Assembly: GCF_006345805.1 (NCBI RefSeq)
Contig: NC_042999.1
Coordinates: 22,568,001-22,632,000, forward strand
From: Octopus sinensis
Lineage: Eukaryota
Reading direction: 5' to 3'
DNA length: 64,000 bases
The notes under the pieces were generated by a model, which made no database searches, had not been told where the DNA came from, and saw only the letters and a program-made list of their open reading frames with translations. Shown here one piece after another: positions 2,355 through 60,785 of this stretch. The stretch's first letter is position 1, and the number at the start of each line of letters is the position of its first letter. Made by a program: the position numbers and the translations under genes.

Positions 2355-2384
2355 AACAAAACTTATACAGTTACCTCCATTCAC
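2355..2384 (+). CDS. iGluR 30-nt micro-exon (NKTYTVTSIH), start of the S1 ligand-binding segment
   Basis: Pyrimidine tract plus TTTCAG acceptor and CAC|GTAAGT donor. Phase 0 joins the next exon to give NKTYTVTSIH-SPPFV, which resembles the iGluR S1 start (NRTxxVTTILEEPYV). Confidence 0.75.
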
Positions 2385-8185: not shown

Positions 8186-8383
8186 TCTCCCCCCTTTGTT
8201 CTCCACACTGTCAATGAAACAACCGGAGAAGAGACCTACAGTGGATTCATTGTTGATATCTTGGACGACATTGCCAAAATGAATGGCTTTAAATACAAGA
8301 TTCAAATGGTTCGTGACGGAAAATATGGAGCAATTTCAAAAGGCGGAAACTGGTCAGGAATGGTCGGAGAAATCATAAACGAG
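8186..8383 (+). CDS. iGluR exon, S1 (SPPFVL...GFIVDILDDIA...DGKYGA...WSGMVGEIINE)
   Basis: TTTTCAG acceptor, GAG|GTAAAT donor, 198 nt, phase 0-0. Carries the DGKYG and W-x-GMVGE iGluR motifs. Missed by the ORF track. Confidence 0.95.
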
Positions 8384-10335: not shown

Positions 10336-10371
<36 letters not shown>

Positions 10372-10780
10372 AAGAAAGAAGAAAGATAAAAAGAAAGGAA
10401 GGAAGAAAGAAAGAAAAAAGAAAGAAAGAAAGGAAAGAAGAAGAAAGAAGAAGGAAGGAAGGAAGAAAGTGAGAAAGAAAGAAAGAAAAAAGGAAGGAAT
10501 TAAGAGGAAAGGAAAAAAGAAAGAAAGAAAGAAAGGAAAGAAGAAGAAAGAAAGAAAGAAGAAAAAAGAAAGAGAAAGAAAGAAAGAAAAAAGAAAGAAA
10601 GAAAGAAGAAAGAAAGAAAGAAGAAAGAAAGAAAGAAGAAAGAAAGAAATAAAGAAAGAAGGAAGGAAGGAAGGAAGGAAGGAAGGAAGGAAGGAAGGAA
10701 GGAGGAAGGAAGGAAGGAGGAAGGAAGGAAGAAAGAAAAAGAAAGAAAGAAAGAAAAAAGAAAGAAAGAAATAAAGAAAG

Positions 10781-10811
<31 letters not shown>

Positions 10812-10975
10812 AGAGAGAGAGAAGAGAGATATAGAGAGAAGAAAGAGAGAAAGAAGAAAGGAAGGAAGGAAGAAAAAAGAAAGAAGAAATAAAGAAGGAT
10901 GGAAAGAAAAGAAAGAAAGAAAGAAAGAAAGAAAGGAAGGAAGAAAAAAGAAAGAAAGAAATAAAGAAGGATGGA

Positions 10976-11011
<36 letters not shown>

Positions 11012-11042
11012 AAAGAAGAAAAGAAGGGGAGGAGCGAGGGAG
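10336..11042 (+). repeat. ~700-nt almost pure purine tract (GAAA/GGAA/GA repeats)
   Basis: Directly visible. The K/E/R-rich and F/L/S-rich ORFs here are artefacts. Confidence 0.95.
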
Positions 11043-11163: not shown

Positions 11164-11518
11164 GTGGCAGATATTGCCGCAGCTCCCCTCACTGTGACAG
11201 CCGCTCGTCAGAAGGTCATTGATTTTTCTGCACCATTTCAAAAAGCAAGCCCGGCCATTTTACTCCGTAAGCCAAAGAACGACCAAGTCGGGTTTGTGGA
11301 TCGATTTATGAGGCTTTTTGTACCCATGTCTTCTAGTGTTTGGCTGCACACCTTCATCGGGATGCTGGCAACTGCCATTGCTCTCTATGTCATCTGCTAC
11401 TTCAGCCCCATCGAATGGCGGAAAATGGCCATCCACAAAGACGCGACTTTCAGAGAAAGAGAGTCGTTCACGTGTCTGAACAGTTTTTGGTTTGTTGCAA
11501 GCTGCCTCGTTTGGCAAG
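11164..11518 (+). CDS. iGluR exon: end of S1, M1 and M2 pore loop (VADIAAAPLTVTAARQKVIDFSAPF...FWFVASCLVWQ)
   Basis: TTTAG acceptor, CAAG|GTACGT donor, 355 nt, phase 0-1. APLT-x4-R-x3-IDFS motif, hydrophobic M1, FWF pore helix. Confidence 0.95.
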
Positions 11519-11698
11519 GTACGTATAATCTAATACCTTTTTTATCTTTAAATCTTTTACTCGCTTTAGTCATTGGTTGCGGCCACGCTGGAGCACTGCC
11601 TTCAATAGATGACCCCCCCCCGCCAAAGCCTAATAAAACATTAAACTTTACAAAACAAAAATTGTTTTAAATGAGAGAAGTTCTTTATTTATATATAC

Positions 11699-12085
11699 AC
11701 TAGCAGTATCGCCCGGCGTTGCTCAGGTTTGTAAGGGAAATAACTATAAAGCATTTTTAGAGAGTTATAGCCAAAAAATAGGAAAACAAATGGGAAAAAA
11801 ATTATGGTAAATTTTTTTTGAGAGTTAAAAAAGGTCGAGTTGCGTCCCCTAGACAGTCTGTGGTTTGTGTTTCTGATTCTCGACCCCATGTCGAATTTAT
11901 CGATTTTTTCAGAACTGGGGGAACTTTTCAAAATTTTCGCTGCGTTAGTTTTGAATTATGACATTGGGCTATGTGTGTGTCAAGTTTCATCAGAATCGGT
12001 TGAAAGCCGTGGTCAGAGTGAGGGTACAAGCAAACAGACACACAGAAACACACACAGACAAACTGCCGTTTATATAGAGAGAGAT
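11699..12085 (+). mobile_element. Helitron/HINE-like element (ACTAGCAGTATCGCCCGGCGTTGCTC start)
   Basis: The same termini recur at ~34258-34650 (+) and ~31670-32365 (-). Ends in a CAGA/CA microsatellite followed by TTTATATAGAGAG. Confidence 0.55.
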
Positions 12086-12567
12086 ATATAGGCACAGGCA
12101 CGGCTGAATGGTAAGAAGCTTGCTTATGAACCACATGGTTACGGGTTCAGTCCCACAGCATGGCACCATGGGCAAGTCTCTTCTTTTATAGCCTCGGGCT
12201 GACCAAAGCCTTGTGAGTGAATTTGGTAGACGGAAACTGAATGAAGCCCGTCGCATATATATATATGTGTGTGTGTGTGTGTGTTTGTCACCCCGTCATC
12301 GCTTGACAACCGATGTTGGTATGTTTACATCCCCGTAACTTAGCAATTCAGCAAGAGGCCAATAGAATATGTACTAGGCTTACAAAGAATAAGTCCTGGG
12401 GTCGATTTCTTCAACTAAATCACTTTGATTTTGCTTACTTTAAAGAGATCGTAGCGAATTACGAACATATGAAAATCGAACTTAAATACAGTCAAAAACA
12501 CTAAAGTGAAAAGAATTTGCATTTTGACATATAACATATGAAAGAAATGTGTTTGAACTCAGATTAG

Positions 12568-12989
12568 GATCTTTTCGGTTTGAAAGGCAGTTTTTTCTAG
12601 CGGTGTCATATGAAATTGTCACCCATAATTATGACCCTAGTATCGATCTATTGCATTTCAATCTGTTTTAGGGTTAGGGTTAGTTAGGGTTAGGGGTGGG
12701 GGGAAGGGTATCTTTTTTTCTTCACAGATGTAAATAAACCCAATCTGTTTCTTAAACGAGGGACATATTCATATGGCACAGAATGTTTTCACCTCAACAT
12801 ACGTCATTGATTAGTTGAAATTGCAGAAATTGAAGAAAAAAAACAACAAATATCTTACAAACTATAGAATTTTCTCAATAAAGCCAAGAGAAAAAGATGT
12901 TTTATAAACACATTCTACCAGTATACGAAGTTTAAAAGTGTTTAGTTACGTGGAAATTATTTTAAACTGCCGGTCAAACCGAAAAGATC
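12568..12989. mobile_element. MITE with ~26-bp TIRs and internal TTAGGG repeats
   Basis: GATCTTTTCGGTTTGAAAGGCAGTTT / AAACTGCCGGTCAAACCGAAAAGATC. The right half is homologous to ~40270-40510. Confidence 0.75.
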
Positions 12990-13115
12990 TTCAGATTATT
13001 TTTCACGTATGCCATTCTGTGAATCACTCAACTTATCTTTCCAGACCCATATACTTAATCAACTTCAGTTATCTCCCTTAGCTTATTTTCTTTTTATAAT
13101 TTCGTTTTTGGATTT

Positions 13116-13713
13116 GGTTTGCAAGATTCTTTATATGAGTTCGTGTGTTGAAGCATTTTCTGTTGTGTCTGGGGAGAGTCATTTTCTTTTTGTGCCTTAT
13201 AATTTAATACACTCACCGGTAAAATTTCCACTTATTTCTTATTCTTATTTTTATTGTCCTAAAATTTTCGTTGCACCTTGCAACCTTTTCAATAGTCTTG
13301 ACTATCTATTTCCCATATATGGTTTGCAAGATTCTTTATGTGAGTTCGTGTGTTGAAGCATATTCTGTTGTGTCTGGGGAGGGTCATTTTCTTTTTGTGC
13401 CTTATAATTTAACACACTCACCGGTAAAATTTCCACTTACTTCTTATTTTTATTTTCCTAAAATCTTCGTTGCGCCTTGCAACCTTTTCAATAGTCTTGA
13501 CTATTTATTTCCCATATATGGTTTACAAGATTCTTTATATGAGTTCGTGTGTTGAAGCATATTCTGTTGTCTGGGGAGGGTCATTTTCTTTTTGTGCCTT
13601 ATAATTTAACACACCCACCTGTAAAATTTCCACTTCTTATTTTTATTTTCCTAAACTTTTCGTTGCGCCTTGCAACCTTTTCAATAGTCTTGACTATATA
13701 TTTCCCGTATTTA
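13116..13713. repeat. ~200-bp tandem repeat, 3 units
   Basis: Unit starts GGTTTGCAAGATTCTTTAT at 13116, 13321 and 13520. Confidence 0.9.
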
Positions 13714-13779
13714 TATGAAATTAAAATATATTTTTTTACAAATTCAAACTGTCGGTATTTATTTGTTTATTTTTAACAG

Positions 13780-14528
13780 GATATGAAAGAACGCCTCGCT
13801 CGGTCGGCGCCAGAATTATTGTTTTCTTCTGGTGGGTATTCTGCGCATTATTTCTCATGACATATACAGCGAGTTTGACGAATTATTTGCGCATCATCTC
13901 CCAGTGGGACGCTCATTGGTCCAGTATGCCTGTAGTAGGTGACCTCCAGGAGTTGTCCAATCAGAACGTCATAAAATATGGAATGATAGAGGGTGGATCG
14001 ACAAGCGCATCCTTTGCAAACAGTAACGTAGGCTTCATGAGAAATATCTACACCAATATCAAAAACCGCAATTCTTTTCACAGCTCCATTAATGACGGAG
14101 TTGATAGAATTCGCAAATCGTTTGAAGAACCATATGCTTTCATAATGGAATCACCTTCGGCTATGTATCTTGCCAATCGAAAGCCATGCGATCTCATGCT
14201 CATTTTGGACCCATTAGCATATGAAAGATACTTTGCTTTCGGCTTCAAAAGAGGATCTAACCGCGTCGGCGCTTTCAACCAAGCAATCCAAGAAATGCGA
14301 GAGAGCGGCCGCCTAAATGAACTTAAAAATATTTGGTGGAAAGACCAATGCGCCAGTTTTGACAATGTTTTACAAAAACCAGCGAGGGAATCGTTTTATT
14401 CGGTGACACTCGGAAGTTTTTCGGGAGTTCTCATAATGTTGGCAATTGGTGTGATACTCGGTTCTATTGTAGCAGGAATTGAAGGACTCGTGACCCGACG
14501 AAAATACAGCGTTACCGGAAGCATTTAA
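13780..14528 (+). CDS. iGluR last exon: M3, S2, M4, short tail, stop
   Basis: TTAACAG acceptor, phase 1 gives QG-YERTPRSVGARII. Then TYTASLTNYL (M3), YGMIEGGST, YAFIMES, both disulfide Cys (KPC, WWKDQC), M4, and TAA at 14526-14528. Confidence 0.96.
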
Positions 14529-16964: not shown

Positions 16965-17689
16965 TTAAAAACAAAGCTCTTTCGGAGGAGGTCGAGTTGG
17001 AATTTTCCCTAGAATAAATTTCTGAGCTTGATATTGTTCTAGTTCAGGAGGGGTGAGATCTTCAAATGGTGTATAGATTGTCAAGGATTCCAGTGATGGT
17101 GGAGACTGGGGAGTGAAAACTGACGAACCAACAGAAGGGACTTGATCGAAAACAGACCCGGTCATACCTGATGGCATGGCTGATCCAAACACAGAAGACT
17201 GCTGCACCGGTTGCTGCCCAAATACAGAACTTTGCTGAGAAGGAGCAGGAGCAGGAGCAAGACCAGGTTTACCAAAAAGACCAGCCCCGCTGCTAGCGCT
17301 AACATTAGACGACAATGATGAATTTCCAAAAACAGACCCAAATGAAGTATTTTGATTCAGCGAAGGGGCCGAATTACCAAAGACACTCATTTGGGAGTTT
17401 GCACCTATCGGTTGCACAGTATTTAAAGTTGAAGAATTCCCAAATGTATTTTGTAATGGCGAAGCTGCTGTCTGCACGCCTCCAAATACACTGCTGACGT
17501 TCCCAAATGTATTATTTCCTTGATTTGGCACATTTGCATAATTGCACATCATGTTCCCTGAACTGTTGCCACCAAATGCACTGCCCTGACTCTGGAAAGG
17601 AGTGGAACCGCTCTCCTGCTGTCCAAACACCTTTGATGCTCCAGACACAAAACTTAAAGACTGTCCGAAAGCATTTGAAGATCCAAAGG
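16965..17689 (-). CDS. NUP42: NUP42 exon 8 (last): FG-repeat region and C-terminal GLE1-binding segment
   Basis: Acceptor TTTATTTCAG, phase 1. Many FG/SVFG repeats. Ends LTPPELEQYQAQKFILGKIPTRPPPKELCF*, matching the NUP42 C-terminal motif (F-x-LGKIP-x2-PPP-x-EL). Confidence 0.95.
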
Positions 17690-18848
17690 CTGAAATAAAA
17701 CAAAATGAAGGAAAATTCATTAATCTTGATTGGGTTGAGATTTTTTTTTTTTTTTTTTTTACCTTAACTCGTTAGCATACAAATTATTCGGCCAAAAATA
17801 AAGCTTATTTATTCACATTGTTTTGAATTAATTATATACTCTTTTACTTGTTTCAGTCATTTGACTGTAGCCATGCTGGAGCACCGCCTTTAGTCGAGCA
17901 ATTCGACCCCAGCACTTATTCTTTGTAAGCCAAGTACTTATTCTATCGGTCTCTTTTGCCGAACCACTAAGTTACAGGGACGTAAACAAACCAGCATCGG
18001 TTGTCAGGCGATGTTAGGGGGACAAACACAGACACACAAACACATACACACACACATAGACATATATATATATACATATATACGATGGGCTTCTTTCAGT
18101 TTCCGTCTACCAAATCCACTCACAAGGCTTTGGTCGGCCCGAGGCTATAGTAGAAGACACTTACCCAAGATGCCACGCAATGGGACTGAACCTGGAACCA
18201 TGAGGTTCATAAGCAAGCTACTTAACACAGAGCCACTCCTACAACTATATATTATCTTATAGCATTGAAATTTTGATGATGTGATCATATATTTTTATAA
18301 CTGACATTATGGGGGTAGGTACGAGAAACCAGATCTGTCCAATTTCAACATAAAAGAACTAGAATGTTTGAGCTGGATATGGCCAGTTTAAGTGCCAAAG
18401 GATGCAGGTTAATTGTTGAAGAGGGGATAATATAACTGGTTTCATTAACCTTGATATATTAGAGTTATGTTCTTGAATGGAGGTATGAAAAAACAAAGCC
18501 ATCATTGAAAGGAGTGGAACATGGAAGGAACTTTCAGGAACACTAGTGGTTTACTGAGGTGGAAGGCTGTGAACTTTCCTGTATCGAAGTACAATAAGCT
18601 GAAAAAAATTGTTTCATATTTCACAGTAGGCAACCAGGGTTGCCAGGTATGTGAATGAGATACAGGAGTTAAGGAATGGAGTAGATAATAAATGCCCAGA
18701 TATTATCTACTCCATATATATATATATAACTGCCAAAGTTATCTTACTAAAATAAAAAATAAGACTATCATATTTAAAAAAAAAAAAAAAATAGACTATC
18801 ATATACAAAAAAAAAATGGCACAACGTAATAAATATATTATTGCTTAC

Positions 18849-47170: not shown

Positions 47171-50070
47171 TACAATAAGATATATGTGTCTGTGGAATTT
47201 CAAAAGTACACATTTCCATAAGAAAAATAAAATTGAAGTTGTGATTTTGTTTTGTGTGGCTGTGTAGTAGGAAGTTTGCTTTCCAACCACATGGTTCTGG
47301 GCACCTTGGGCAAGTGTCTTCTACTATAGCCTCGAGCTGACCAAAGCTTTGTGAGTGGGTTTGATAGTGGGAAACTAAAAGAAGCCTGCCATTTGTGTGT
47401 GTCACCATCACTTGACAACCGATGCTGGTGCATTTATGTATCTGTAACCTAGCGGTTCAGCAAAATAAACGATAGAACAAATGCCAAACTTTTGACAAAA
47501 GATTCTTCAAAGAAGTGCCCCAGTATGGCCGCAATATAATGACTGATTTAAATTTTTGCATCTGAACCAGGTAGATAGTTAAAAAAATAAATGAAATCAA
47601 AAATGAGGAAGTTACTGTCAGTTGCATGGTTTCACATGACAAAAGTAGGGCAACAAAAGAAACAAAGAAACATTTTCCAAGCTGGCATGGGTTGGACGGT
47701 TTGACAGGAGCTGACAAACCAGATAGCTGCCCAGTTGCCACTTGTCTGCTTTTGCCCACTTGACAATTGTCTGCTTTTTACAGCTGGATGCCCTTCCTAA
47801 TGCAAACCACTTTATAGAGTGTACTGGGTGCTTTTTACATAGCATTGGCACGAGTGCTTATTGCATGGCACCAGCACAATTTTACTCTTTTACTTGTTTC
47901 AGACATTTGACTGCAGCCATGCTGGAGCACTGCCTTTAGTCGAGCAAATCGACCCCAGGACTAATTCTTTGTAAGCTTACTACTTATTCTATTGGTCCCC
48001 TTTGTCAAACCGCTAAGGGGACATAAACACACCAGCATTGGTTGTCAAGCAATGTTGGGAGGACAAACACAGACACAAACATATACACACACATACATCA
48101 TCATCATTATCATCATCGTTTAACATCCGCTTTCCATGCTAGCATGGGTTGGACAATTTGACTGAGGACTGGTGAACCAGATGGCTGTACCAGACTCCAA
48201 TCTGATCTGGCAGATTTTCTACAGCTGGATGCCCTTCCTAATGCCAACCACTCCAAGAGTGTAGTGGGTGATTTTACATGCCACTGGCACAAGGGCCAGT
48301 CAAGCAGTACTGAAAACGGCCACACTCAAATGGTGTTTTTTTACATGCCACCTGCACAGGAGTATATATATATATAAATATATATACATACACATATATA
48401 TGACGGGTTTCTTTCAGTTTTCTATTTCTTTATTATCCACAAGAGGCTAAACATAGAGAGGACAGACAAAGGGATTAAGTCAATTACATCAACCCCAGTG
48501 CATAACTGTTACTTAATTTATCGACCCCAAAAAGATGAAAGGGAAAGTCAACCTCAGCGGAATTTGAACTCAGAACGTTATGGAAGACGAAATACTGCTA
48601 AGCATTTCGCCCAGCATGCTAACGTTTCTGCCAGCTCGCCACCTTAAGTTTCAGTTTCCGTCTACCAAATCCACTCACAAAGCTTTGGTCGGCCTGAGGC
48701 TATAGAAGAAGACACTTGACCAAGGTGCCATGCAGTGGGACTGAACCCGGAACCATGTGGTTGGTAAGCAAGCTACTTACCACACACCCACCGCTCCTGC
48801 ACCTATTTTGAAAATAATAATTTTTTTCAGAGTCAAAACCAGCAATGTTTAACTCAGAAATCCTAAACTATAGTAAATTCAATTTACTTCCTACTAAACC
48901 ATGGTCTGATTAAAACTTAAATCAGGTTATTTGAGGTCTTGATATCTTATACCTTTTTTAAGTATGCAGGTGATAGTGTTGTCAAAAGGGTTAAAATTTC
49001 AGCACTCCACACTCATACTCACATACATCCTTAGGTATTTTAGTTCATCCTATGTGTCCAGTTTCAACAAAGGTATTTCCACATGCTTGGAATCCTTTTT
49101 GTTGCTGTCACGGTTTTCTATTTTTTTTTTATTCTGTTCTAATTGTTTTCAAATTTGGGGAACTGATGTAGTTTTCTATGCTAATTCTTACCAGGAATAA
49201 CAACCTGTCATTTCTGTAGCACAGGGTTACTATGATAATTGGCATAGCAACTTTACTCTTATTTATAGCCAGGGAAAATAAAAAGATAAACTCGCAAAGA
49301 GCTTAGCTATGGATTCAGTTGTTACAAGCAGAGGAGAGAGAAACCCTGTCTCTAATGCGGGTAACATTTCCAGAAGGTCAGGTGTTTCTTGTTTTATCCC
49401 TTTTGTTACCATATTTCTGTTGAAATACATCTTTTTTGTTCCTATTAATTTATAGAATTCTGTGTCGCCATCGTATCTGCATCGCCTTACTGGCACTTGT
49501 GCTGGAAGCACATGAAAAATCATTTGAGTGAAGTCATTGCCAGTGCCGCTGGACTGGCTCCTGTGCAGGTGGCACATAAAAAGCACCATTTGAGCTTGGC
49601 CGTTGCCAGTACCACCTAACTGGCCCCTCGTGCTGGTGGCACGTAAAAGCACCCACTACACTCTCGGAGTGGTTGGTGTTAGGAAGGGCATCCAGCTGTA
49701 GAAACTCTGCCAGATCAGATTGGAGTCTGATTCACCAGACCTCGGTCAAATCGTCCAACCCATGCTAGCATGGAAAGCGGGCATTAAACGATGATGATGA
49801 TGATGAAGAATTTTGTAAAATAACTTCATTGTTATTAAGCTACTGTTTGGAACATTAATTAACATAAATTTTGCTCAAGAACACCACACACAGCCTGTCC
49901 AGAAATGGAACTCACAACCTCACAATTTGAAGGCCAACACTCTAACCACTGAGCTATGCACCTTAACACTCTCAGTACCATAAAGAAAAAGAAAAAAATC
50001 AGTCAACCACTTTCCTGTTTCATGACAACTAAAAGGACAGTACATTATTTACATTTGATGGATATTTGTC

Positions 50071-51843
50071 CTCTAAGCCCCTGTACCTGGCTTTTGTTGA
50101 CATGGAGAAAGCCTTCGACAGGGTCCCCCGATCCCTTATCTGGTGGTCAATGAGGAAACTAGGGATAGATGAATGGTTAGGGAGAGCTGTGCGAGCCATG
50201 TACAGAGACGCTGCTAGTAAGGTAAGGGTTGGCAATGAGTACAGTGAAGAATTCCGGGTAGAGGTTGGGGTCCACCAAGGTTCAGTCTTCAGTCCCCTCC
50301 TATTTATCATAGTCCTCCAGGCAATAACGGTGGAATTCAAGACAGGATGCCCCTGGGAGCTCCTCTATGCTGATGACCTTGCTCTAATTGCTGAGTCACT
50401 ATCAGAACTGGAGGAGAAGTTTCAGGTGTGGAAGCAAGGATTAGAATCGAAGGGCCTTAGAATCAACCTAGCCAAAACCAAAGTCCTAATAAGTAGGAAG
50501 GTAGACCAATCACAAACGACTTCAGGTAGATGGCCCTGCTCGATCTGTAAAAAAGGTGTAGGTAGAAACTATAAGGTGCACCAAGTGTAAGCTATGGACA
50601 CATAAGAGGTGCAGCAATGTCAAAGGAAGGCTAACTAGGAAAATAGTTTTTGTCTGTGGCAGATGCTCAGGAGCAATAAACACTGGAAATGTGCAGAGAC
50701 CAACTTCCACCACGTTCCAGGGAGACAAACTAGAAGTAGTTGATAGCTTCCGCTACCTAGGTGACCAAGTCAGTAGCGGGGGTGGGTGTGCTGAAAGTGT
50801 AACTGCTAGAGTAAGAATAGCCTGGGTAAAGTTTAGAGAGCTCTTACCCCTGCTGGTGACAAAAGGCCTCTCGCTCAGAGTAAAAGGCAGACTGTATGAT
50901 GCATGTGTACGTACAGCCATGCTACATGGTAGTGAAACATGGGCCGTGACTGCTGAGGATATGCATAAGCTCGCAAGAAATGAAGCCAGTATGCTCCAAT
51001 GGATGTGTAATGTCAGTGTTCATAATCGACAGAGTGTAAGTACCTTGAGAGAAAAGTTGGACCTAAGAAGTATCAGTTGTGGTGTGCAAGAGAGACTTTT
51101 GCGCTGGTATGGTCATGTGACGAGAATGGCTGAAGATAGTTGTGTGCAAAAGTGCCACACCCTAGCAGTTAAGGGAACCTGTGGAAGAGGTAGACCCAGG
51201 AAAACCTGGGACGAGGTGGTGAAGCATGACCTTCGCACTTTAGGTCTCACCAAGGAAATGACTAGAGACCGAGACCTATGGAAGTATGCTGTGCGTGAGA
51301 AGACCCGGCAAGACTAGTGAGACCATAACCTGTGGCCTCTACCTGGTATGTAGCCAGTCGACTTATACATACCTTTCCTTCTTGGGACACAAAACTCCAC
51401 TTGTGAAGACCCGTTGTGACAAGTGAAAATCAAAATCAAATCAAACCAAATCAAATCAGATATCAGAAATCAGAACCAAAATTGAAGTCGATCAACATCA
51501 GTGGAAATTGCGGCTGTGATACCAGTGCCGGTGACGAGTAAGCGAACCATCCGATCGTGGCCGTTGCCAGTGCCGCCCCGTCTGGCCTCCGTGCCAGTGG
51601 CACATAAAAGCGCCATCCGTTCGTGGCCGTTTGCCCGCTCCGTCTGGCTCCTGTGCGGGTGGCACGTAAAAAGCACCCACTACACTCGCGGAGTGGTTGG
51701 CGTTAGGAAGGGCATCCAGCCGTAGAAACACTGCCAGATCAGACTGGGCCTGATGCAGCCTTCTGGCTTCACAGACCCCAGTTGAACCGTCCAACCCATG
51801 CTAGCATGGAAAACGGACGCTAAATGATGATGATGATAATGAT
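50071..51843 (+). mobile_element. 5'-truncated RTE-clade LINE: RT domain, PHD-like insert, C-terminus, 3' UTR, (GAT)n tail
   Basis: AFVDMEKAFDRV, GVHQGSVFSPLLF, LLYADD motifs. One frameshift near 50570 separates ORFs 50066..50590 and 50691..51317. Confidence 0.95.
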
Positions 51844-52600: not shown

Positions 52601-52732
52601 AGTATAGCATAAACTGTTTGTTTCTGCACAAATGTCAAGAAGTAATTTCTCCAGGAGGCAGGCAAGAGATTGTGTGAATTATTTCTTTGTGAGTTTTTTA
52701 ATGAAGAAACCTTATTTAAATCTCCCCCACAG

Positions 52733-52865
52733 GACCCAAATGAAGACACTCAGTGGAACGATGTTCTCCGGGCAAAAGGTATTCTACCACCCAAAGAAGA
52801 GAAAGAAATCACAGAAGATGAGATTATTAAACTTGTAGAAAGCACCATTAAGGAAAAAACAACTG
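52733..52865 (+). CDS. PDCL3: PDCL3 exon 2 ([22 protein letters not shown]...)
   Basis: CCCCCACAG acceptor, G|GTAAGA donor, 133 nt, phase 0-1. Hallmark PhLP2/PDCL3 N-terminal motif. Confidence 0.96.
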
Positions 52866-54657
52866 GTAAGATATTTCATTATTATTATTATTATTATTAT
52901 TCATTTAATGTCCGCTTTCCATGCTAGCATGGGTTGGACGATTTGACTGAGGTCTGGCAAACCAGATGGCTGCACCAGACTCCAATCTGATCTGGCAGAG
53001 TTTCTACAGCTGGATGCCCTTCCTAATGCCAACCATTCTGAGAGGGCAATGGGTGCTTTTACGTGCCACCGGCGCGAGGGTCAGTCAGGTAGTACTGGCA
53101 GCGGCTATGCTCAAATGGTGCTTTTTATGTGGCACCTGCACAGGAGCCAGTCCAGTGGCACTGGCAACGACCTCACTCAAATGTTTTTTCACGTGCCACC
53201 AGCTCAAGTGCCAGTAAATTGTTGTTGTTGTTATCATATAAGGCAGCAAGCTGGCAGAGTCGTTAGCATGCTGGGCGAAATGCTTAGCGGTATTTCATCT
53301 GCTGCTGCATTCTGAGTTCAAATTCCACTGAAGTCGACTTTGCCTTTCATCCTTTCAGGGGTCGATAAAATAAGTACTAGTTGAACAATGAGGCCAATTT
53401 AATCAACTCATTCCCTGCCCCAAAATTACTGCCCTTGTGGCAAAATTTGAAATCATTATTATTATTGAGTGAGTGAGAGAGCAGTGCATGCCATCAAAGT
53501 GACACTGGGGTAAAAATATATGAAGCCCAGTATACCCATCATGACTACCCTTCTGATAAGGGTACACATGGCACATGCATCACAACCATATGTGCGCGAC
53601 ATGGTGATCTCATATCAAGATAAACAGCACATGACCTTGCAGGTGGGGCCCAGTTAGAATTTTCTTCTGGTCGAAGAGCCCATCCTACTCAAAAGTTCCC
53701 TGAATAAGGGTTGTTTAAGGATGTAGAACGAAACACCCATGTTTCCAGAGGTGAATTATTCAAACCCCAAAGAATCCTTCTCAACGCATGGATAGGATGC
53801 TCTCCCACTACTTCTGCTCATGATCCGAGATACATATAGTCAACCACTAAGGGACATGGTCAACTGGTTATGGTCAAACAACTGACAAGCAAATCTGTGG
53901 TATTGGGCAGAATATTTGCTGTAGCCCATCTTTTATACCAAGACAAAACAATGTACATGATAACACTTCCAATCAGTTAAGATCAGAAGCCATGAGAGCC
54001 ACTGCCTGGTACTGCATCAGGGCATTTGTTGTTGGTGGTGGTGTTGTTGTTGTTGTAGTAGTAGTAGTAGTAGACATGACACTATATACAATATCGTGAG
54101 GTTGTTGATTGAAGATATTGTGTCTACTGGGTGGCTTGTTTTGTTTGTCAAGTCACACAACAAGACCCTCAGACAGACAGTACTTTACGCAATATGTGTG
54201 CAGTTCCAAGTAATGCCAACTTTTGCAATACATCTAGATCGTAGGGTATTTCTAAAGTTTTCAAATGTTTTTTTCATATTGGGTGGTATTGAACCCAATG
54301 TTCCAATGACAATAGTGAGGATACACCTGTGATATAAAAAGATAATATAAAAAGAGAAATGGGCTCTCTACCCCTCTTTTGACCAGGCACCCGTGGCTTT
54401 TATGGGTTTTTCCAGGAGTAACCTTTCGAAGCGCCTCCCCCTATTGGGAGTTTTAATTGTTATATTTTCGTTGTTATTTCACATTTTTACACGGACTTTT
54501 TTTCAACCAGACAAAACCCTTTTGTAACTTTCGTCCTGTATTTGTCCCTACATGTTTTAATTGATTTTTGTTAGCCCTTGTGGCCAATAAACGAATTATT
54601 ATTATCATCATCATCATCATAGTTATTATTATTATTATTATTATTATTGTTATACAG

Positions 54658-54748: not shown

Positions 54749-56162
54749 GTTGGTACAGTTTCTATCTGAATTTAAATACAGGTTTTCTCAGTGGGAACTC
54801 TTATGGGGATGGGCATCTAGATTCACAGTTCTGAGCACTTTGGGATATTACTCTTTTACTTGTTTCAGTCATTTGATTGCGGCCATGCTGGAGCACCACA
54901 TTTAGTCGAGCAGATCGACCCCAGGACTTATTCTTTGTAAGCCTAGTACTTATTCTATCGGTCTCTTTTGCTGAACCACTAAGTTACGGGGATGTAAACA
55001 CACCAGCATCAGTTGTCAAGCGATGTTGGGGGGGACAAACACAAACACACACACACACACATATATATATATACATATACATATATACGACAGGCTTCTT
55101 TCAGTTTCCATGTACCAAATCCACCCACAAGGCTTTGGTCGGCCCAAGGCACCACGCAGTGAGACTGAATCCGCAACCATGTGGTTGGTAAGCAAGCTAC
55201 TTACCACACTGCCACTCCTGTACCTAGTGCCCATAGCTCTTTTTACAAGACCTCCATAACTGATGAGTTTCTGCTTTAGAAAGCAATGCATTTATTCTCA
55301 GACTACAATACTTGCATGCTTAGTACCAAGTGATTTGGCTAAAGGTATCCAAAGTCCAAGTAGGGGTATGAATCCTTTAGCATTTAAACTGGCCATATTT
55401 GGCGCAAATATTCTGCTCGTTTTATACTCAAACTGGCCAGATCCAGCCTCTTACTCCTATCACATACACTGTTATTCCGAAACTAAGCAATCACATTATC
55501 AAAATTTCAAAGCTGCATGATAATGCATGGTTAATTCTAAACAATACAATGTGAGTTCATGGTTGTTTCCTGCACCAGTTTCACATAGCAGCCCCAGCCC
55601 ATCCAAAGTACCTTGGATTGCAGAACAACCTGCTGTGCTTACCTTAGATCATAGAGTGACCTGCTGTGCTTCAGGAGACCTATTGAGTCAAGTACATCAA
55701 CATTAAAATATAAATCAAATGGGAATTGTAGTTGTGTTACCTGTGCCGGTGGCACGTAAAAAGCACCATCTAAACGTGGCCAATGCCTGCACCGCCTTGA
55801 CTGGCTTCCGTGCCGGTGGCACATAAAAAGCACCAACCAATTGTGGCCGCTGCCAGCCTCCCCTGGCACCTGTGCCGGTCACACATAAAAAGCACCCACT
55901 ACACTCACGGAGTGGTTGGCATTAGGAAGGGCATCCAGCTGTAGAAACACTGCCAGATCAGACTGGAGCCTGGTGCAGCCTCCTGGTTTCCTGGACCCCG
56001 GTCAAACCGCCTAACCCATACTAGCACGGAAAATGGATGCTAAACGATGATGATGATGATGATAATGAATAAGCAATACTTTTGACAGTTTACATCTATT
56101 GCCTAAATGTAATGTGCCCATATTTAATGATCTTTATCCTATTTGTTCCTTCTCTCTTTCAG

Positions 56163-56306
56163 ACGGCAACGCATGTTAGAAATGAAAGCAGCCAACCTGG
56201 CTGCAAAATATGGGGATGTTTTAGAAATTTCCAAAGAAGATTATGTTACAGAAGTTAACAAAGCAGGCGAAGGAGTGTGGGTCATCCTTCATGTCTATAA
56301 ATGTGG
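56163..56306 (+). CDS. PDCL3: PDCL3 exon 4 (RQRMLEMK...[32 protein letters not shown])
   Basis: CTCTTTCAG acceptor, GG|GTGAGT donor, 144 nt, phase 2-2. Confidence 0.95.
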
Positions 56307-56670
56307 GTGAGTAAAATAACTGTCTGTTTAGGTATTACTGAAAATTCAACTATTCTACTCTTTTACTTGTTTCAGTCATTTGACTGTGTCCATGCTAGAG
56401 CACTGCCTTTAGTCAAGCAAATTAACCCCAGGACTTATTCTTTTGTAAGCCTAGTACTTATTCTATCAGTCTCTTTTGCCAAATCGCTAAGTTACATAAT
56501 AATAATAATAATAATAATTGTGTACAGTGCTCAGGTGCACTACAACTCATCTAAAGTGTATATATAATCAGGTGTAGTTTCGACGGATTTCGGGAAGCAT
56601 GAGGGCCTTAAAGGATGCAGTGTCATGGCATCAGTTGTCAAGCGATGTTGGGGGGACAAACATATACACC

Positions 56671-56702
<32 letters not shown>

Positions 56703-57356
56703 CGACAGGCTTCTTTCAGTTTCTGTCTACCAAATCCACTCACAAGGTTTTGGTCATCCTGATACTATAGTAGAAGACATTTGCCATGCAATGGGACTGA
56801 AGCCGCTGTCCAATTTTATTTTTGGTTGTATTTTATTGTTTAAAAATCACGCCAAAACTAACCCCGCCTGTACTAGTGCTACGTAAAAAGCACTGAGTCC
56901 ACCCTGCTAAAACAGACACAGTAGTCTAGGGTAGTCTTCTACCTTGCTGGCTCATGTCAACCATCCTACCCTTGCATGGAAGACAGACATTAAATAATGA
57001 TGATGATGATAGTGTTAGTCATTAGACTGAGGTCATGCTGGAGCACCGCCTTGAAGAATGAATCAACCCTAGTACTTATTTTTTGTAAGCCTGGTACTTA
57101 TTCTGTTAGTCTTTTTTGCCAAACCGCTAAGTTACAGGGATGTAACCATACCAGCACCATTTGTCAAGTGGTGATAGGACACACACACATATATATATAT
57201 GAGGGAGAGAGAGAAATGATGAGCAGGTAAATTATACATGGCATGAAAGATGTTACATAAGAACATTTGATGAAGAAAAAATATAGTCCCACATAAATCT
57301 TTACAGCTGTTTCAAAAATTTTCTACAATAATTTGTTTTTGTTCTTGTTGTTGTAG

Positions 57357-57565
57357 TATTCCATTGTGTACGCTCATAAACCAACATCTAACTGGCCTTG
57401 CACGTAAGTTCCCACAGACGAAATTCATCAAGAGCATATCGTCGGTCTGTATTCCAAATTACCCCGACAAAAACTTACCCACCATCTTTGTATACTTCGA
57501 AGGAAATATAAAGAAGCAGTTTGTTGGTCCATTTGCCTTTGGTGGAATGAAACTAACAATTGATG
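57357..57565 (+). CDS. PDCL3: PDCL3 exon 5, thioredoxin-like domain ([11 protein letters not shown]...KFP...[16 protein letters not shown])
   Basis: TTGTAG acceptor, G|GTAAGT donor, 209 nt, phase 2-1. Confidence 0.96.
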
Positions 57566-58847
57566 GTAAGTAACACTTATAATCTCCAAACACTCTTTTG
57601 GATTTTCTTGGTTTATACTTCATGTTATTTGCCCCACCTCTCCAAAAAAAATGGTGCATGCTAAATGGCTTAGAATATTCAATTTTCTCTCCTGCTTTCT
57701 GAGGCTGAATCCCGTGAAGACATGGGATGAAGTACTGAGGAATGACCTCAGGATGCTGAGCCTTTCAGGCAAGATGATAAAGGACTGAGATGCCTTGTGC
57801 CTTGCTGTACTCAAGAAAACCCATATTCCACAGCAAAAGTGTTAAGATCAGTCCCTACTGGTGCTGCCTCATAAAGTGTCCATGCAGTGCCATATAAGCG
57901 TGTCCATGCAGTGCTGCGTAAAAGCACCCAGCACATTCTGTAGTGGTTGGCATTAGGAAGGGCATCTAACCATAGAAACCTTGCCAAATCAGATTGGAGT
58001 CTGGTGCAGCTCTTGTCAAGCCATCCAATCCATGCCAGCATGGACAACAGATGTTAAATGATGATGAGGAGGAGGCTTGGTTATTAGCTCCTATTTTGAC
58101 ATGTGAATATGTACCACGAATCCAGGACTTTTGTATGTAAAGGTGTAATGATCCTCTTTGCTACAATGGCCTGGGCAGTTTTTGTTGTTTTGTTACTTTT
58201 TTTCTCTCTCTTTTGAAAGGCATAAACATGGCTCTGTAGTTAAGTTTGCTTCCCAACCACATAGTTATAGATTGAGTACCATTTCATGGTCTTCTACTAT
58301 GGTCCAGCTTTGTGAGTGGATTTGATAGACTGAAACTGAAAGAAACCCGTTGTGTGCATGTGTGTGTGTGTTGATATCTCTTTGTCTTGACACCATGTGA
58401 TTGTTGTAAATAGGTGCCACTGTTATATGAATGGTGTGCTTTATTTCCCGTTTTCTATGTAAATATGTCCATGGCTGGTTACAGGAAATAGTGAAAACAG
58501 GAAGGGCATCAGGCTGTAGGAAACCTGCCTCAACAAATTCCATCTAACCCATGCAAAAGTGGACGTTAAAACGATGGTGATTATGATAGAAGGCTAGCAG
58601 TTGTCCATGTATGCAGGTTTATCCTATTTACAGCATTGATGTTATCCAATGAAAATGCAAGGTGCAGTGCAGCTTGGCACCAGTGTCATCATAGACATTA
58701 TCATTAAAATGTGAATGGCTGCACAGATTACCCCAAGGTGCCTTATCTTGCACTGTAACAATTCTACCCTTTTGCCACTCTAGAGTGGTACTTTATCAAC
58801 TTCAAAGGAATATAAGGCAAAATTAGCTTTGGCGAGAATTGAATTTA

Positions 58848-60183: not shown

Positions 60184-60639
60184 CATAGGAGCGGCTGTGT
60201 GGTAAGTAGCTTGCTTACGAACCACATGGTTCCGGGTTCAGTCCCACTCCGTGGCACCTTGGCCAAGTGTCTTCTACTATAGCCTCGGGCTGACCAAAGC
60301 CTTGTAAGTGGATTTGGTAGATGGAAACTGAAAGAAGCCCATCGTATATATGTATGTATGTGTTCTTGAGCAAAACACTTCATTTCACGTTGCTCCAGTC
60401 CAATCAGCTGGCAAAAATGAGTATCGATGCGATGGACTGCTGTCCCGTCCAGCTGGGGAATACATACGCCATAGAAACCGGGAAACTGGGCCCATGAGCC
60501 TGGCTAGGCTTTAAAAGGGTGCATTAATTGATTGAATAATGATGACAAAGACAGTGTGTTGTTTGTGTGCATGTGTGGGTTTTTTGTTTTGTTTTTTTGT
60601 TTTTTTTATTAATATATTTTTATTTATTTGTCTTTCCAG

Positions 60640-60785
60640 ATCTTGAATGGATGCTTTCTGAAGTTGGTGCAGTTAAAACTACATTAGAATGTTGTCCTAA
60701 AAAAGAAGGAATAAGAGATGTAATGGACATGGCTGTTAAGAGTAGCAGAATCACTGACGACAGTGATGACGAAGACGATTGGTAA
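60640..60785 (+). CDS. PDCL3: PDCL3 exon 6 (last; DLEWMLSEVGAVKTTLE...DDSDDEDDW*)
   Basis: TCTTTCCAG acceptor, phase 1, TAA at 60783-60785. The six exons sum to 729 nt (242 aa). Confidence 0.95.

What the first reader, a model, noticed from the sequence alone, without database searches (positions are those of the whole stretch)
11490..13890. iGluR with Trp at the Q/R site and a rewritten SYTANLAAF gate
Seen: the spliced pore loop reads FWFVASCLVWQG-YERTPRS, aligning W to the Q/R/N position of GluA2 FMQQGCD. M3 reads TYTASLTNYL, with Ser for N5, Thr for A7 and Asn for A8. Known: A8 is the Lurcher position and A7 lies at the activation gate; substitutions there give constitutive or slowed gating in vertebrate iGluRs, and the Q/R residue sets Ca2+ permeability and polyamine block. 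The agonist contacts appear intact (DGKYG Tyr, APLT, TAAR Arg, GGST, IMES Glu). Inference: a lineage-specific subunit that still binds an amino-acid ligand but gates or conducts differently, or works only as an obligate heteromer or modulatory subunit.
Basis: partly seen in the sequence, partly recalled or inferred. Interest (0 to 1): 0.7.

Follow-up and report, generated by a model that had tools for sequence, protein, structure and literature searches.

The report
Octopus short glutamate receptor, tryptophan pore
This is an intact, conserved octopus gene for a short glutamate-receptor-like channel subunit of the catalogued but functionally untested molluscan "IR-A" group; the unusual tryptophan in its pore and its altered gate are real features shared by the whole group, not damage or a cephalopod novelty.

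Summary
Splicing 11164-11518 to 13780-14528 gives ...CLVWQG/YERTPRS and TYTASLTNYLR. Aligned to rat GluA2, W226 sits at the Q/R site, S259 at N5, T261 at A7 and N262 at A8. The Y/P/T/R/S/T/E agonist contacts are present.

- The protein (XP_029633512.1, 476 aa) has no amino-terminal domain.
- The motifs are not lineage-specific. A 31-sequence mollusc clade (bootstrap 100) keeps W in 27 and N at A8 in 30. W also occurs in short relatives from chiton, annelid, nemertean and brachiopod.
- Two papers that apply the naming of Andouche 2021 (not readable here) call this family "IR-A". It is probably the "AKDF group II" of Singh 2025.

Octopus versus Argonauta gives dN/dS of about 0.09, so this is not a pseudogene.

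Engineered GluK2 Q590W, with Trp at the same site, still conducts and binds spermine 6,600-fold more tightly. My best reading is an amino-acid-gated channel subunit with an aromatic ring in its pore, strong polyamine rectification and shifted gating, possibly paired with IR25. No functional data exist. I rate it a known kind and of moderate interest.

The parts
2355..2384 (+). Small coding exon, residues 34-43 (NKTYTVTSIH). The exons for the signal peptide and for KKDDA lie upstream of the window.
   Evidence: tblastn of P0001. AG/GT borders read. Spliced translation equals P0001 residues 34-476.
8186..8383 (+). Exon for the first part of ligand-binding lobe S1, residues 44-109. Includes DGKYG at 8315-8329 (Y90 = GluA2 Y450).
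11164..11518 (+). Exon for the rest of S1 (APLT 11182-11193, TAAR 11197-11208), pre-M1, M1 (11338-11403) and the M2 pore helix (11473-11511). It ends with W226 (TGG 11512-11514), Q227 and the first base of G228.
11512..11514 (+). TGG codon for Trp226, at the Q/R (Q586) position at the tip of the pore loop.
   Evidence: Gap-free alignment to GluA2. W in 27 of 31 core-clade sequences.
11519..13779 (+). Intron 4, phase 1, splitting the pore loop after WQ. It is made of repeats: a 199-bp tandem repeat in 3 copies at 13115-13710 and 26-nt inverted arms at 12568/12964. The same intron position is found in Argonauta.
   Evidence: GT...AG borders. Repeats. Argonauta exon ends.
13780..14528 (+). Last exon. 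It carries the rest of the selectivity filter (G)YERTPRS, M3 (13809-13892), the lengthened M3-S2 linker, S2 (GGST 13992-14003, IMES 14142-14153), M4 (14409-14492), a 10-residue tail ...RRKYSVTGSI and the TAA stop at 14526-14528.
13860..13892 (+). Gate motif TYTASLTNYLR in place of SYTANLAAFLT. Changes: S259 (N5), T261 (A7 = A621), N262 (A8 = A622, the Lurcher position), R265 (= T625).

Best explanation
The window holds the last four exons of an intact, selectively maintained gene for a 476-residue variant ionotropic glutamate receptor subunit. Its parts are a signal peptide, S1, M1, the M2 pore loop, M3, S2, M4 and a very short tail. It has no amino-terminal domain. It belongs to the mollusc family that the literature calls IR-A.

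Shown here:
- The gene anatomy and the absence of the amino-terminal domain.
- The W/S/T/N substitutions and their conservation across molluscs.
- Purifying selection.
- Retention of the residues that hold the alpha-amino and alpha-carboxyl groups of an amino-acid ligand (R124, T119, E351). T302 is kept at the gamma-carboxyl position, and M350 rather than Trp sits at the L704 position. This fits a glutamate-like ligand rather than glycine.

Inferred:
- It is a channel-forming, amino-acid-gated subunit.
- The four (or two) Trp side chains form an aromatic ring above the selectivity filter, as modelled for the engineered GluK2 Q590W channel. That channel still conducts but binds cytoplasmic spermine about 6,600-fold more tightly.
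- The octopus protein also keeps the acidic +4 residue (E230) that polyamine block requires. The predicted phenotype is therefore a conducting but very strongly inwardly rectifying channel.
- Thr at A7, Asn at the Lurcher position A8, Arg at the T625 position and a 6-7-residue longer M3-S2 linker are expected to shift gating toward high apparent agonist sensitivity, slow deactivation or some constitutive opening.
- By analogy with insect IRs, and with the poor homotetramerisation of Q/R-edited GluA2 (from memory), it may normally assemble with the IR25 co-receptor in peripheral chemosensory cells.
For: - Anatomy and identity.
- No amino-terminal domain: P0001 is 476 aa, and Pfam finds only Lig_chan-Glu_bd and Lig_chan. 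All core homologues are 463-579 aa. The AF2 model (pLDDT 76.6) matches the AMPA-receptor LBD-TMD layers.
- Residue equivalences.
- Conservation: 43 invariant columns including R124, T302, E351, Q227, G228 and P233-R234-S235. In the core clade of 31, W occurs in 27, T at A7 in 27, N at A8 in 30, R at +5 in 30 and R at the T625 position in 28.
- Selection: dN 0.151, dS 1.76, ratio 0.086 overall; pN 0.054 in M1-M3.
- Family name IR-A.
- Expression of gastropod and bivalve IR-A genes in tentacle, antenna and lip, and in some cases more broadly.
- Trp at the Q/R site gives a functional channel with spermine Kd(0) of 190 pM. E594 is required for block. The indoles are modelled pointing up into the central cavity.
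- The Q/R site is energetically coupled to M3 position L614. That position is A in cephalopods and mostly V or L in W-type sequences, against L in 66 of 70 Q-type sequences.
- Effects of A8T and A7 substitutions.
Against: - There is no expression or electrophysiological evidence for this gene or any close relative.
- The pore loop is the least confident part of the model (pLDDT below 50 at residues 205-215 and 225-232). A monomer model says nothing about the Trp ring.
- The conserved Arg at +5 (R231), next to E230, and the Arg ring at the T625 position could weaken cation or polyamine binding in ways the GluK2 mutant does not capture.
- Gastropod and bivalve members lack the +4 acid (T or V). 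Strong polyamine block therefore cannot be the reason W is conserved across the whole family.
- The intact R/T/E triad is atypical for chemosensory IRs.
- The one IR25-like sequence in my set is no closer to this family than AMPA/kainate receptors are. The IR25-partner idea rests on analogy only.
- All gastropod and bivalve orthologues with complete ends finish in [S/T]-x-V, a PDZ-ligand pattern more usual in synaptic receptors.
Confidence: 0.5

Rival explanations
1. It is a homomeric or IR-A-only neuronal or synaptic glutamate receptor. It is an ancient short AKDF-type receptor rather than a chemosensory IR, and it works without IR25.
For: - It keeps the complete R/T/E ligand triad plus T302.
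- Its best similarity among named and solved proteins is to AMPA receptors.
- The distance to the IR25-like sequence (1.98-2.16) is larger than to AMPA/kainate types (1.58).
- All gastropod and bivalve orthologues with complete ends finish in [S/T]-x-V.
- Homomeric GluK2 Q590W conducts.
- Short relatives exist in hemichordates, whereas IRs are said to be absent from deuterostomes.
- Singh 2025 lists an uncharacterised bilaterian AKDF group II from molluscs, annelids, cephalochordates and Ptychodera.
Against: - Published mollusc trees place the family among IRs.
- IR-A genes are reported in sensory tissues.
- The cephalopod proteins have lost the PDZ-type ending.
- My neighbour-joining tree does not resolve deep nodes (bootstrap below 20).
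Confidence: 0.25
2. It is a ligand-binding but essentially non-conducting subunit. It would be a binding protein, or a modulatory or scaffolding partner, like vertebrate kainate-binding proteins or wild-type GluD.
For: - The architecture has no amino-terminal domain and is about 50 kDa. NCBI names orthologues 'probable glutamate receptor' and 'glutamate receptor U1-like', and from memory these are the Swiss-Prot names of kainate-binding proteins.
- There is a bulky Trp at the narrowest point of the pore.
- There are Arg rings at +5 and at the T625 position.
- The M3-S2 coupling linker is lengthened.
Against: - The pore and gate are the most constrained part of the protein. M1-M3 pN is 0.054, and QG, PRS and the pre-M2 motif ESFTC.N are invariant.
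- Trp at this site does not stop conduction in GluK2.
Confidence: 0.15
3. It is local decay, a pseudogene, or a sequencing or assembly error.
For: None found.
Against: - The reading frame is open across all four exons, with canonical splice sites.
- It is identical to the RefSeq protein, and near-identical in O. vulgaris.
- The motifs are the same in Argonauta, with the same intron position.
- dN/dS is about 0.09.
Confidence: 0.01

Closest known systems
Molluscan IR-A clade of variant ionotropic receptors (naming of Andouche, Valera & Baratte 2021, used in PMC12837371 and PMC11682238)
   Same: - CchIR-A.2 carries the same signature...REAESFTCMNAFWF..MWQGYMHAPRS...LTYTANLTNLLRIGP.
- The N-terminal peptide of P0011, the top-scoring family representative, occurs once in the file holding Table S3 of that paper. 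The returned snippet shows only the header >BarIR-A.1, not the peptide itself.
- The O. bimaculoides orthologue XP_014781666 is in that paper's reference list.
   Different: - IR-A as published is heterogeneous. A.1 has F at the Q/R site, and A.3 and A.4 have W with a near-canonical AYTANLAAF/AYTSNLTAY gate.
- The octopus gene belongs to the A.2-type subclade, with LTN in the gate and Arg after it.
- In the papers I could read, no function, ligand or pore property is reported for any IR-A.
AMPA receptor GluA2 (for example PDB 4u5b, 3kg2)
   Same: It is the best sequence and fold match (E 6e-69; Foldseek probability 1.00). It shares the LBD-TMD architecture, the agonist-contact residues, the QG and PRS of the pore loop, and the conserved M4 Glu (E462).
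   Different: There is no amino-terminal domain. W replaces Q/R. The gate is TYTASLTNY in place of SYTANLAAF. R replaces T625. The M3-S2 linker is 6-7 residues longer. The tail is 10 residues. The RefSeq name 'glutamate receptor 2' is therefore misleading.
Engineered GluK2 (GluR6) Q590W mutant (Panchenko, Glasser & Mayer 2001, PMC2217257)
   Same: Trp is at exactly the Q/R position, with an acidic residue four positions on (E594 there, E230 here).
   Different: It is a laboratory point mutant in an otherwise canonical full-length kainate receptor. The octopus protein also has Y at +3, R at +5 and a rewritten M3.
Insect tuning IRs with IR25a/IR8a co-receptors (Croset 2010, PMC2924276)
   Same: There is no amino-terminal domain, it is a variant iGluR, and relatives are reported in chemosensory tissue.
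   Different: Tuning IRs lack one or more of the R/T/D-E ligand residues, whereas this protein keeps all three. IR25a has TPQGGGE in the pore, not WQGY.
GluD2 Lurcher (A8T) and A7 gate mutants (PMC3434102)
   Same: The substitutions are at the same two gate positions.
   Different: Here the residues are wild type, Asn at A8 and Thr at A7, and are conserved over hundreds of millions of years. Their effect in this background is unknown.
Bilaterian 'AKDF group II' uncharacterised receptors (Singh et al. 2025, PMC12226733)
   Same: The taxa match (molluscs, annelids, Ptychodera). Their data set holds Capitella ELU17492.1, with ...TLQWQGFEKAPRS... and a short architecture.
   Different: I could not confirm which of their sequences make up group II.
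Vertebrate kainate-binding proteins (from memory, not tested)
   Same: They are about 50-kDa iGluR homologues without an amino-terminal domain.
   Different: They are a vertebrate family. Their relationship and pore residues were not examined here.

Membership tests
Ionotropic glutamate receptor superfamily | S1-M1-pore loop-M3-S2-M4 architecture with Lig_chan-Glu_bd and Lig_chan domains | tested here: met
   Pfam PF10613 at 4e-36 and PF00060 at 7e-25. The fold matches the AMPA-receptor LBD-TMD.
AMPA receptors (GluA), the name given by RefSeq | Amino-terminal domain (PF01094) before S1 | tested here: not met
   A signal peptide is followed directly by S1. No ANF_receptor hit was found. The protein is 476 aa.
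AMPA receptors (GluA), the name given by RefSeq | Q or edited R at the Q/R site and a canonical SYTANLAAF gate | tested here: not met
   W226 is at the Q/R site. The gate TYTASLTNY matches 4 of 9 positions.
Molluscan IR-A clade | Groups with sequences published under that name | tested here: met
   The signature is identical to CchIR-A.2. The P0011 peptide occurs in the file holding Table S3, in a snippet that shows only the header >BarIR-A.1. The O. bimaculoides orthologue is in the reference list. The core clade has bootstrap 100.
Chemosensory IRs sensu Benton/Croset | No amino-terminal domain (except the co-receptors) | tested here: met
Chemosensory IRs sensu Benton/Croset | Ligand-binding domain lacks one or more of the glutamate-contact residues R, T, D/E | tested here: not met
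   R124, T302 and E351 are present and invariant in the family.
Chemosensory IRs sensu Benton/Croset | Phylogenetic grouping with IR25a/IR8a | tested here: inconclusive
   Only one IR25-like sequence (P0159, recognised by FTPQGGG) was available. It is more distant from this family (1.98-2.47) than AMPA/kainate types are (1.58). Deep neighbour-joining nodes are unsupported. Published trees place IR-A among IRs.
Chemosensory IRs sensu Benton/Croset | Expression in chemosensory neurons and dependence on a co-receptor | not testable with these tools
   Only reports for gastropod and bivalve IR-A genes are available.
Polyamine-blocked, inwardly rectifying non-NMDA channels | Uncharged residue at the Q/R site plus an acidic residue at +4 | tested here: met
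   W226 and E230 are present in the cephalopod sequences. Other molluscs have T or V at +4. The functional consequence is not testable here.
Vertebrate kainate-binding proteins | Short iGluR homologue nested within vertebrate kainate-type receptors | not tested
   No kainate-binding protein sequence was available. The resemblance in size, and in the names NCBI assigns, is a lead only.

The most novel reading that the evidence does not exclude
IR-A-type receptors may not be offshoots of the protostome chemosensory IRs. They may instead be an ancient bilaterian class of glutamate receptors without an amino-terminal domain, with hemichordate relatives. Their hallmark would be a natural hydrophobic or aromatic ring (W, sometimes L or F) at the Q/R site, co-evolved with Thr at gate position A7. 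This would give permeation unlike any characterised iGluR: picomolar polyamine block where the +4 acid is kept (cephalopods, some unnamed W-type relatives), or altered charge selectivity given the conserved Arg rings at +5 and at the T625 position.
Probability: 0.2. Interest if true: 0.65.

Novelty: new member of a known kind. Interest (0 to 1): 0.4.

Why it matters
Every functionally characterised iGluR pore has a small polar or charged residue (Q, R, N or S) at the tip of the pore loop. Trp at that site is known to me only as an engineered mutant with extreme polyamine affinity.

Here a whole conserved family across the molluscs carries it naturally, and short relatives in other lophotrochozoan phyla carry it too. 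It comes together with substitutions at the two best-studied gate positions, a longer gating linker and no amino-terminal domain.

Recording from one member would show three things:
- how much of iGluR permeation and gating theory carries over to such a pore;
- what ligand these widespread, intact-looking binding sites detect;
- whether the "IR" label (chemosensor with a co-receptor) or the "short synaptic receptor" label is right.

For the octopus itself, this is a candidate amino-acid sensor alongside the better-known sucker chemotactile receptors. It does not open a long-standing question, and the gene family is already catalogued, so I rate the interest as moderate.

Tried and rejected
1. 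Pseudogene or sequencing error. Rejected: the frames are open, the sequence is identical to RefSeq, the motifs are conserved and dN/dS is 0.086.

2. A GluA2-style RNA-editing hairpin between the exon end (the W-Q codons are 1-7 nt from the donor) and intron 4. Rejected: the RNA fold of 11440-11740 has z = +0.48, and no inverted repeat involves the exon end. TGG also contains no adenosine.

3. A search for the family in the Ramos-Vicente 2018 alignments. No WQG[YF] or SLTN pore or gate match was found. The stored files are truncated, so absence is not shown.

4. Andouche 2021 (Chem Senses), the source of the IR-A name, is not held. I cannot say whether the Trp was noted there.

5. An attempt to fetch mollusc IR25a sequences with the N-terminal 399 aa of CchIR25a found only one fragment. 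A tree including IR25a, IR8a, GluD, Phi, NMDA and epsilon references could therefore not be built. The only IR25-like sequence was a fused model, P0159.

6. The first word-index homology search missed canonical iGluRs. The profile search returned mostly vertebrate GluA2. One high score (P0194, camel GluA4) is an internally duplicated gene model.

7. A full-text search for natural Trp at the Q/R site in IRs or iGluRs found nothing relevant.

8. ARAGORN and Rfam found nothing in the window.

9. The jingle-shell paper has no held supplements.
Full report
**Observation**

The flagged interval spans the end of one coding exon, a 2.26-kb intron and the start of the last exon of a plus-strand gene.
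- Exon 4 (11164-11518) ends ...TGC CTC GTT TGG CAA G|gtacgt.
- Exon 5 begins after ...ttaacag| at 13780 with GA TAT GAA AGA ACG CCT CGC TCG.
- The phase-1 splice reads CLVWQG/YERTPRS.
- M3 reads TYTASLTNYLR at 13860-13892.
- Spliced together, the four exons present in the window (2355-2384, 8186-8383, 11164-11518, 13780-14525) translate exactly to residues 34-476 of a 476-residue protein in the public collections, XP_029633512.1, 'glutamate receptor 2 [Octopus sinensis]'.
- The exons for residues 1-33 (the signal peptide and KKDDA) lie upstream of the window.

**Alignment to GluA2**

HMMER against solved GluA2 chains (E 6e-69) and MAFFT with full-length rat GluA2 both align the pore loop and M3 without gaps.
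- Pore and gate: W226 = Q/R586, Y229 = C589, E230 = D590, R231 = I591, S259 = N619 (N5), T261 = A621 (A7), N262 = A622 (A8, Lurcher), R265 = T625.
- There is a 6-7-residue insertion in the M3-S2 linker.
- Agonist contacts: Y90 = Y450, P117 and T119 = P478 and T480, R124 = R485, S301 and T302 = S654 and T655, E351 = E705. M350 sits at the L704 position.

- A signal peptide is followed within about 10 residues by S1.
- Pfam finds only Lig_chan-Glu_bd, Lig_chan and the overlapping SBP_bac_3.
- An AlphaFold model (pLDDT 76.6; LBD above 85, pore loop below 50) matches the LBD-TMD layers of AMPA receptors.
- The cytoplasmic tail after M4 is 10 residues.

**Conservation and selection**

All close homologues are 463-579 residues and come from molluscs. 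They include Argonauta (75% identity), two cephalopod-like transcript assemblies with no taxon name (59%), the gastropods Batillaria, Biomphalaria, Haliotis, Babylonia and Gigantopelta, and the bivalves Sinanodonta, Mactra, Tegillarca, Mercenaria, Mizuhopecten and Ylistrum.

A 22-sequence alignment has 43 invariant columns. These include R124, T302, E351-S352, the pre-M2 motif E-S-F-T-C-x-N, Q227-G228 and P233-R234-S235.

In a neighbour-joining tree of 158 LBD-TMD cores, these sequences form a clade of 31 with bootstrap 100. Within that clade:
- The Q/R site is W in 27 and L in 4.
- The +3 position is Y or F in all.
- The +5 position is R in 30.
- N5 is S in 24.
- A7 is T in 27 and S in 4.
- A8 is N in 30.
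- The T625 position is R in 28.

I extracted the Argonauta hians orthologue from its genome (L001). It has the same exon ends, including the phase-1 intron after WQ. Over 433 codons, dN is 0.151 and dS is 1.76 (near saturation), a ratio of 0.086. In M1-M3, pN is only 0.054.

Local decay, a pseudogene or a sequencing error are excluded. The motifs are also not a cephalopod novelty.

**Wider family and its name**

I ran an exhaustive profile search of 1.84 billion representatives.
- The core family scores above 430 bits.
- Other short proteins score 300-390 bits, mixed with full-length AMPA- and kainate-type receptors at 295-362 bits.
- Of the 158 sequences with good coverage, 49 have W at the Q/R site. 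All 49 are short. None of the 86 long receptors has W.

Cluster look-ups name some of the short W-type proteins:
- Tubulanus (Nemertea), Owenia (Annelida), Lingula (Brachiopoda) and Liolophura (chiton).
- Second paralogues in Patella, Haliotis and Potamilus.
- Short relatives with L at the site occur in the hemichordates Glandiceps and Ptychodera.

W at the Q/R site and T at A7 co-occur: 44 sequences have both, 5 have W only, 5 have T only and 104 have neither. This count is not corrected for phylogeny.

The supplement of a 2026 survey of gastropod IRs (PMC12837371) links the family to the name IR-A:
- The sequence named CchIR-A.2 has exactly this family's signature.
- The N-terminal peptide of my top-scoring representative P0011 (Babylonia) occurs once in the same file. 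The returned snippet shows only the header >BarIR-A.1, not the peptide itself.
- The paper's reference list contains XP_014781666. This is the partial O. bimaculoides member of the same 90% cluster as the window's protein.

The family is thus the molluscan 'IR-A' clade. That name comes from Andouche et al. 2021, which I could not read.

Singh et al. 2025 describe an uncharacterised bilaterian 'AKDF group II' from molluscs, annelids, cephalochordates and Ptychodera. Their data set includes a short Capitella protein with QWQGFEKAPRS. This is probably the same assemblage.

Ramos-Vicente et al. 2018 note that only a third of iGluRs from newly defined groups have Q at position 586, and that no Phi subunit does. 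A non-Q residue is not in itself unusual outside vertebrates.

**Is it an IR?**

By architecture it is, since it has no amino-terminal domain. By the ligand-site criterion it is not, since R, T and E are all kept.

I could not build a tree with IR25a, IR8a, GluD, Phi or NMDA references. The one IR25-like sequence in hand is P0159, recognised by the FTPQGGG pore that Croset's IR25a alignment shows.
- It is farther from the octopus protein (Kimura distance 1.98-2.16) than AMPA/kainate types are (1.58).
- It is closer to AMPA/kainate types (1.88) than to the W-type proteins (2.36-2.47).
- Deep neighbour-joining nodes have bootstraps below 20.

Membership in the IR lineage is therefore inconclusive. 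Membership in the published IR-A group is met.

**How it probably works**

Three lines of published mutagenesis bear on the motifs.

1. Panchenko, Glasser and Mayer scanned the GluR6 (GluK2) pore with Trp.
   - Q590W, Trp at the Q/R site, gave functional homomeric channels.
   - Spermine affinity rose 6.6 x 10^3-fold, to a Kd(0) of 190 pM.
   - The indoles were modelled as an aromatic cage pointing up into the central cavity.
   - High-affinity block required the acidic residue at +4 (E594).
   - The octopus protein, like the other cephalopod sequences and several unnamed W-type relatives, has W together with E or D at +4. Gastropods and bivalves have T or V there.

2. [quoted passage not shown] The equivalent column is L in 66 of 70 Q-type sequences. 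In W-type sequences it is V (15), L (13), A (7, a count that matches the seven cephalopod rows), F (5) or M (3). This is compatible with room being made for the indole.

3. Substitutions at A7 and A8 alter gating.
   - A8T (Lurcher) gives AMPA and kainate receptors substantial constitutive activity and slow kinetics.
   - Bulky residues at A7 hold NMDA receptors open.

From these I infer a conducting, amino-acid-gated subunit with a naturally occurring aromatic ring. I expect very strong inward rectification in the octopus protein. I also expect a gate biased toward high sensitivity or slow closure.

What partner it uses, and where it acts, is open.
- The chemosensory heteromer with IR25 rests on analogy and on reports that gastropod and bivalve IR-A genes are expressed in tentacle, antenna and lip, some of them broadly.
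- A neuronal or synaptic role is suggested by the intact glutamate-type site. It is also suggested by the [S/T]-x-V ending of all gastropod and bivalve orthologues with complete ends, a motif lost in cephalopods.
- A non-conducting, binding-protein-like role is less likely, because the pore and gate are the most constrained part of the protein.
- The conserved Arg at +5 and at the T625 position, and the longer M3-S2 linker, are not explained by any of these readings.

**Verdict**

The gene is an ordinary, annotated member of a catalogued but functionally unstudied family, so it is a new member of a known kind. The natural Trp at the Q/R site is a worthwhile, directly testable electrophysiology question of moderate interest.

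**Leads that went nowhere**
- The RNA-editing hairpin idea.
- Rfam and tRNA scans of the window.
- Literature searches for natural Trp at this site.

Noticed in passing
window 16968-17771 (- strand); L001 43051-44238 (- strand): An FG-repeat open frame (weak Nucleoporin_FG hit, below the Pfam cut-off) lies about 2.4 kb downstream of the receptor gene on the opposite strand. In Argonauta the gene in the same position carries Amo1_N and NUP42_C domains. The receptor-NUP42 neighbourhood therefore looks syntenic between Octopus and Argonauta.
   Followed up: partly
window 52646-52924, 56131-56307, 57274-57570, probably 60546-60782 (+ strand): These are exons of a phosducin-like protein 3 (PDCL3) gene. 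The joined pieces match human PDCL3 chain 7nvm_P at E 5e-45. Pfam found nothing for the joined pieces.
   Followed up: partly
window 50033-51314 (+ strand): This is a reverse-transcriptase fragment (RVT_1, E 2.6e-21) followed by a weak PHD-like stretch. It is a decayed retroelement.
   Followed up: partly
window 10337-11021: A 685-bp (AGAA)n microsatellite of about 176 copies lies in intron 3, just upstream of exon 4. It explains the strong GC and AT skew of the 10-12 kb bin.
   Followed up: yes
window 13115-13710 and 12568-12989: Intron 4 contains a 199-bp tandem repeat in 3 copies (93% matches) ending about 70 bp before the acceptor. It also contains a pair of 26-nt inverted arms (92% complementary) 370 nt apart, which looks like a MITE.
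   Followed up: partly
P0005-P0032 and P0193 (core family), C-termini: Every gastropod and bivalve orthologue with a complete end finishes in [S/T]-x-V (TDV, TQV, TSV, TAV, TNV, TTV, TKV, SSV), a class-I PDZ-ligand pattern. All seven cephalopod sequences instead have a short tail ending in GSI, KIA or KMA.
   Followed up: partly
P0037/P0191 (Glandiceps talaboti), P0051 (Ptychodera flava): Hemichordates have short (465-519 aa) relatives without an amino-terminal domain, with LQGY in the pore. They fall in the same loosely supported group as IR-A in the tree. The literature states that IRs are absent from deuterostomes.
   Followed up: partly
P0028 (989 aa), P0159 (2317 aa), P0194 (767 aa): Several database gene models are fusions or internal duplications. 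P0028 is two tandem short receptor units, P0159 is two IR25-like units, and P0194 is a camel GluA4 with a repeated LBD-M2 block. Their summed scores inflate their rank in profile searches.
   Followed up: partly
window 11164-14528; RefSeq XP_029633512.1: The automatic names of this family ('glutamate receptor 2', '...4-like', 'kainate 3-like', 'U1-like', 'probable glutamate receptor') are inconsistent and suggest AMPA or kainate identity. The domain architecture and pore contradict that.
   Followed up: yes
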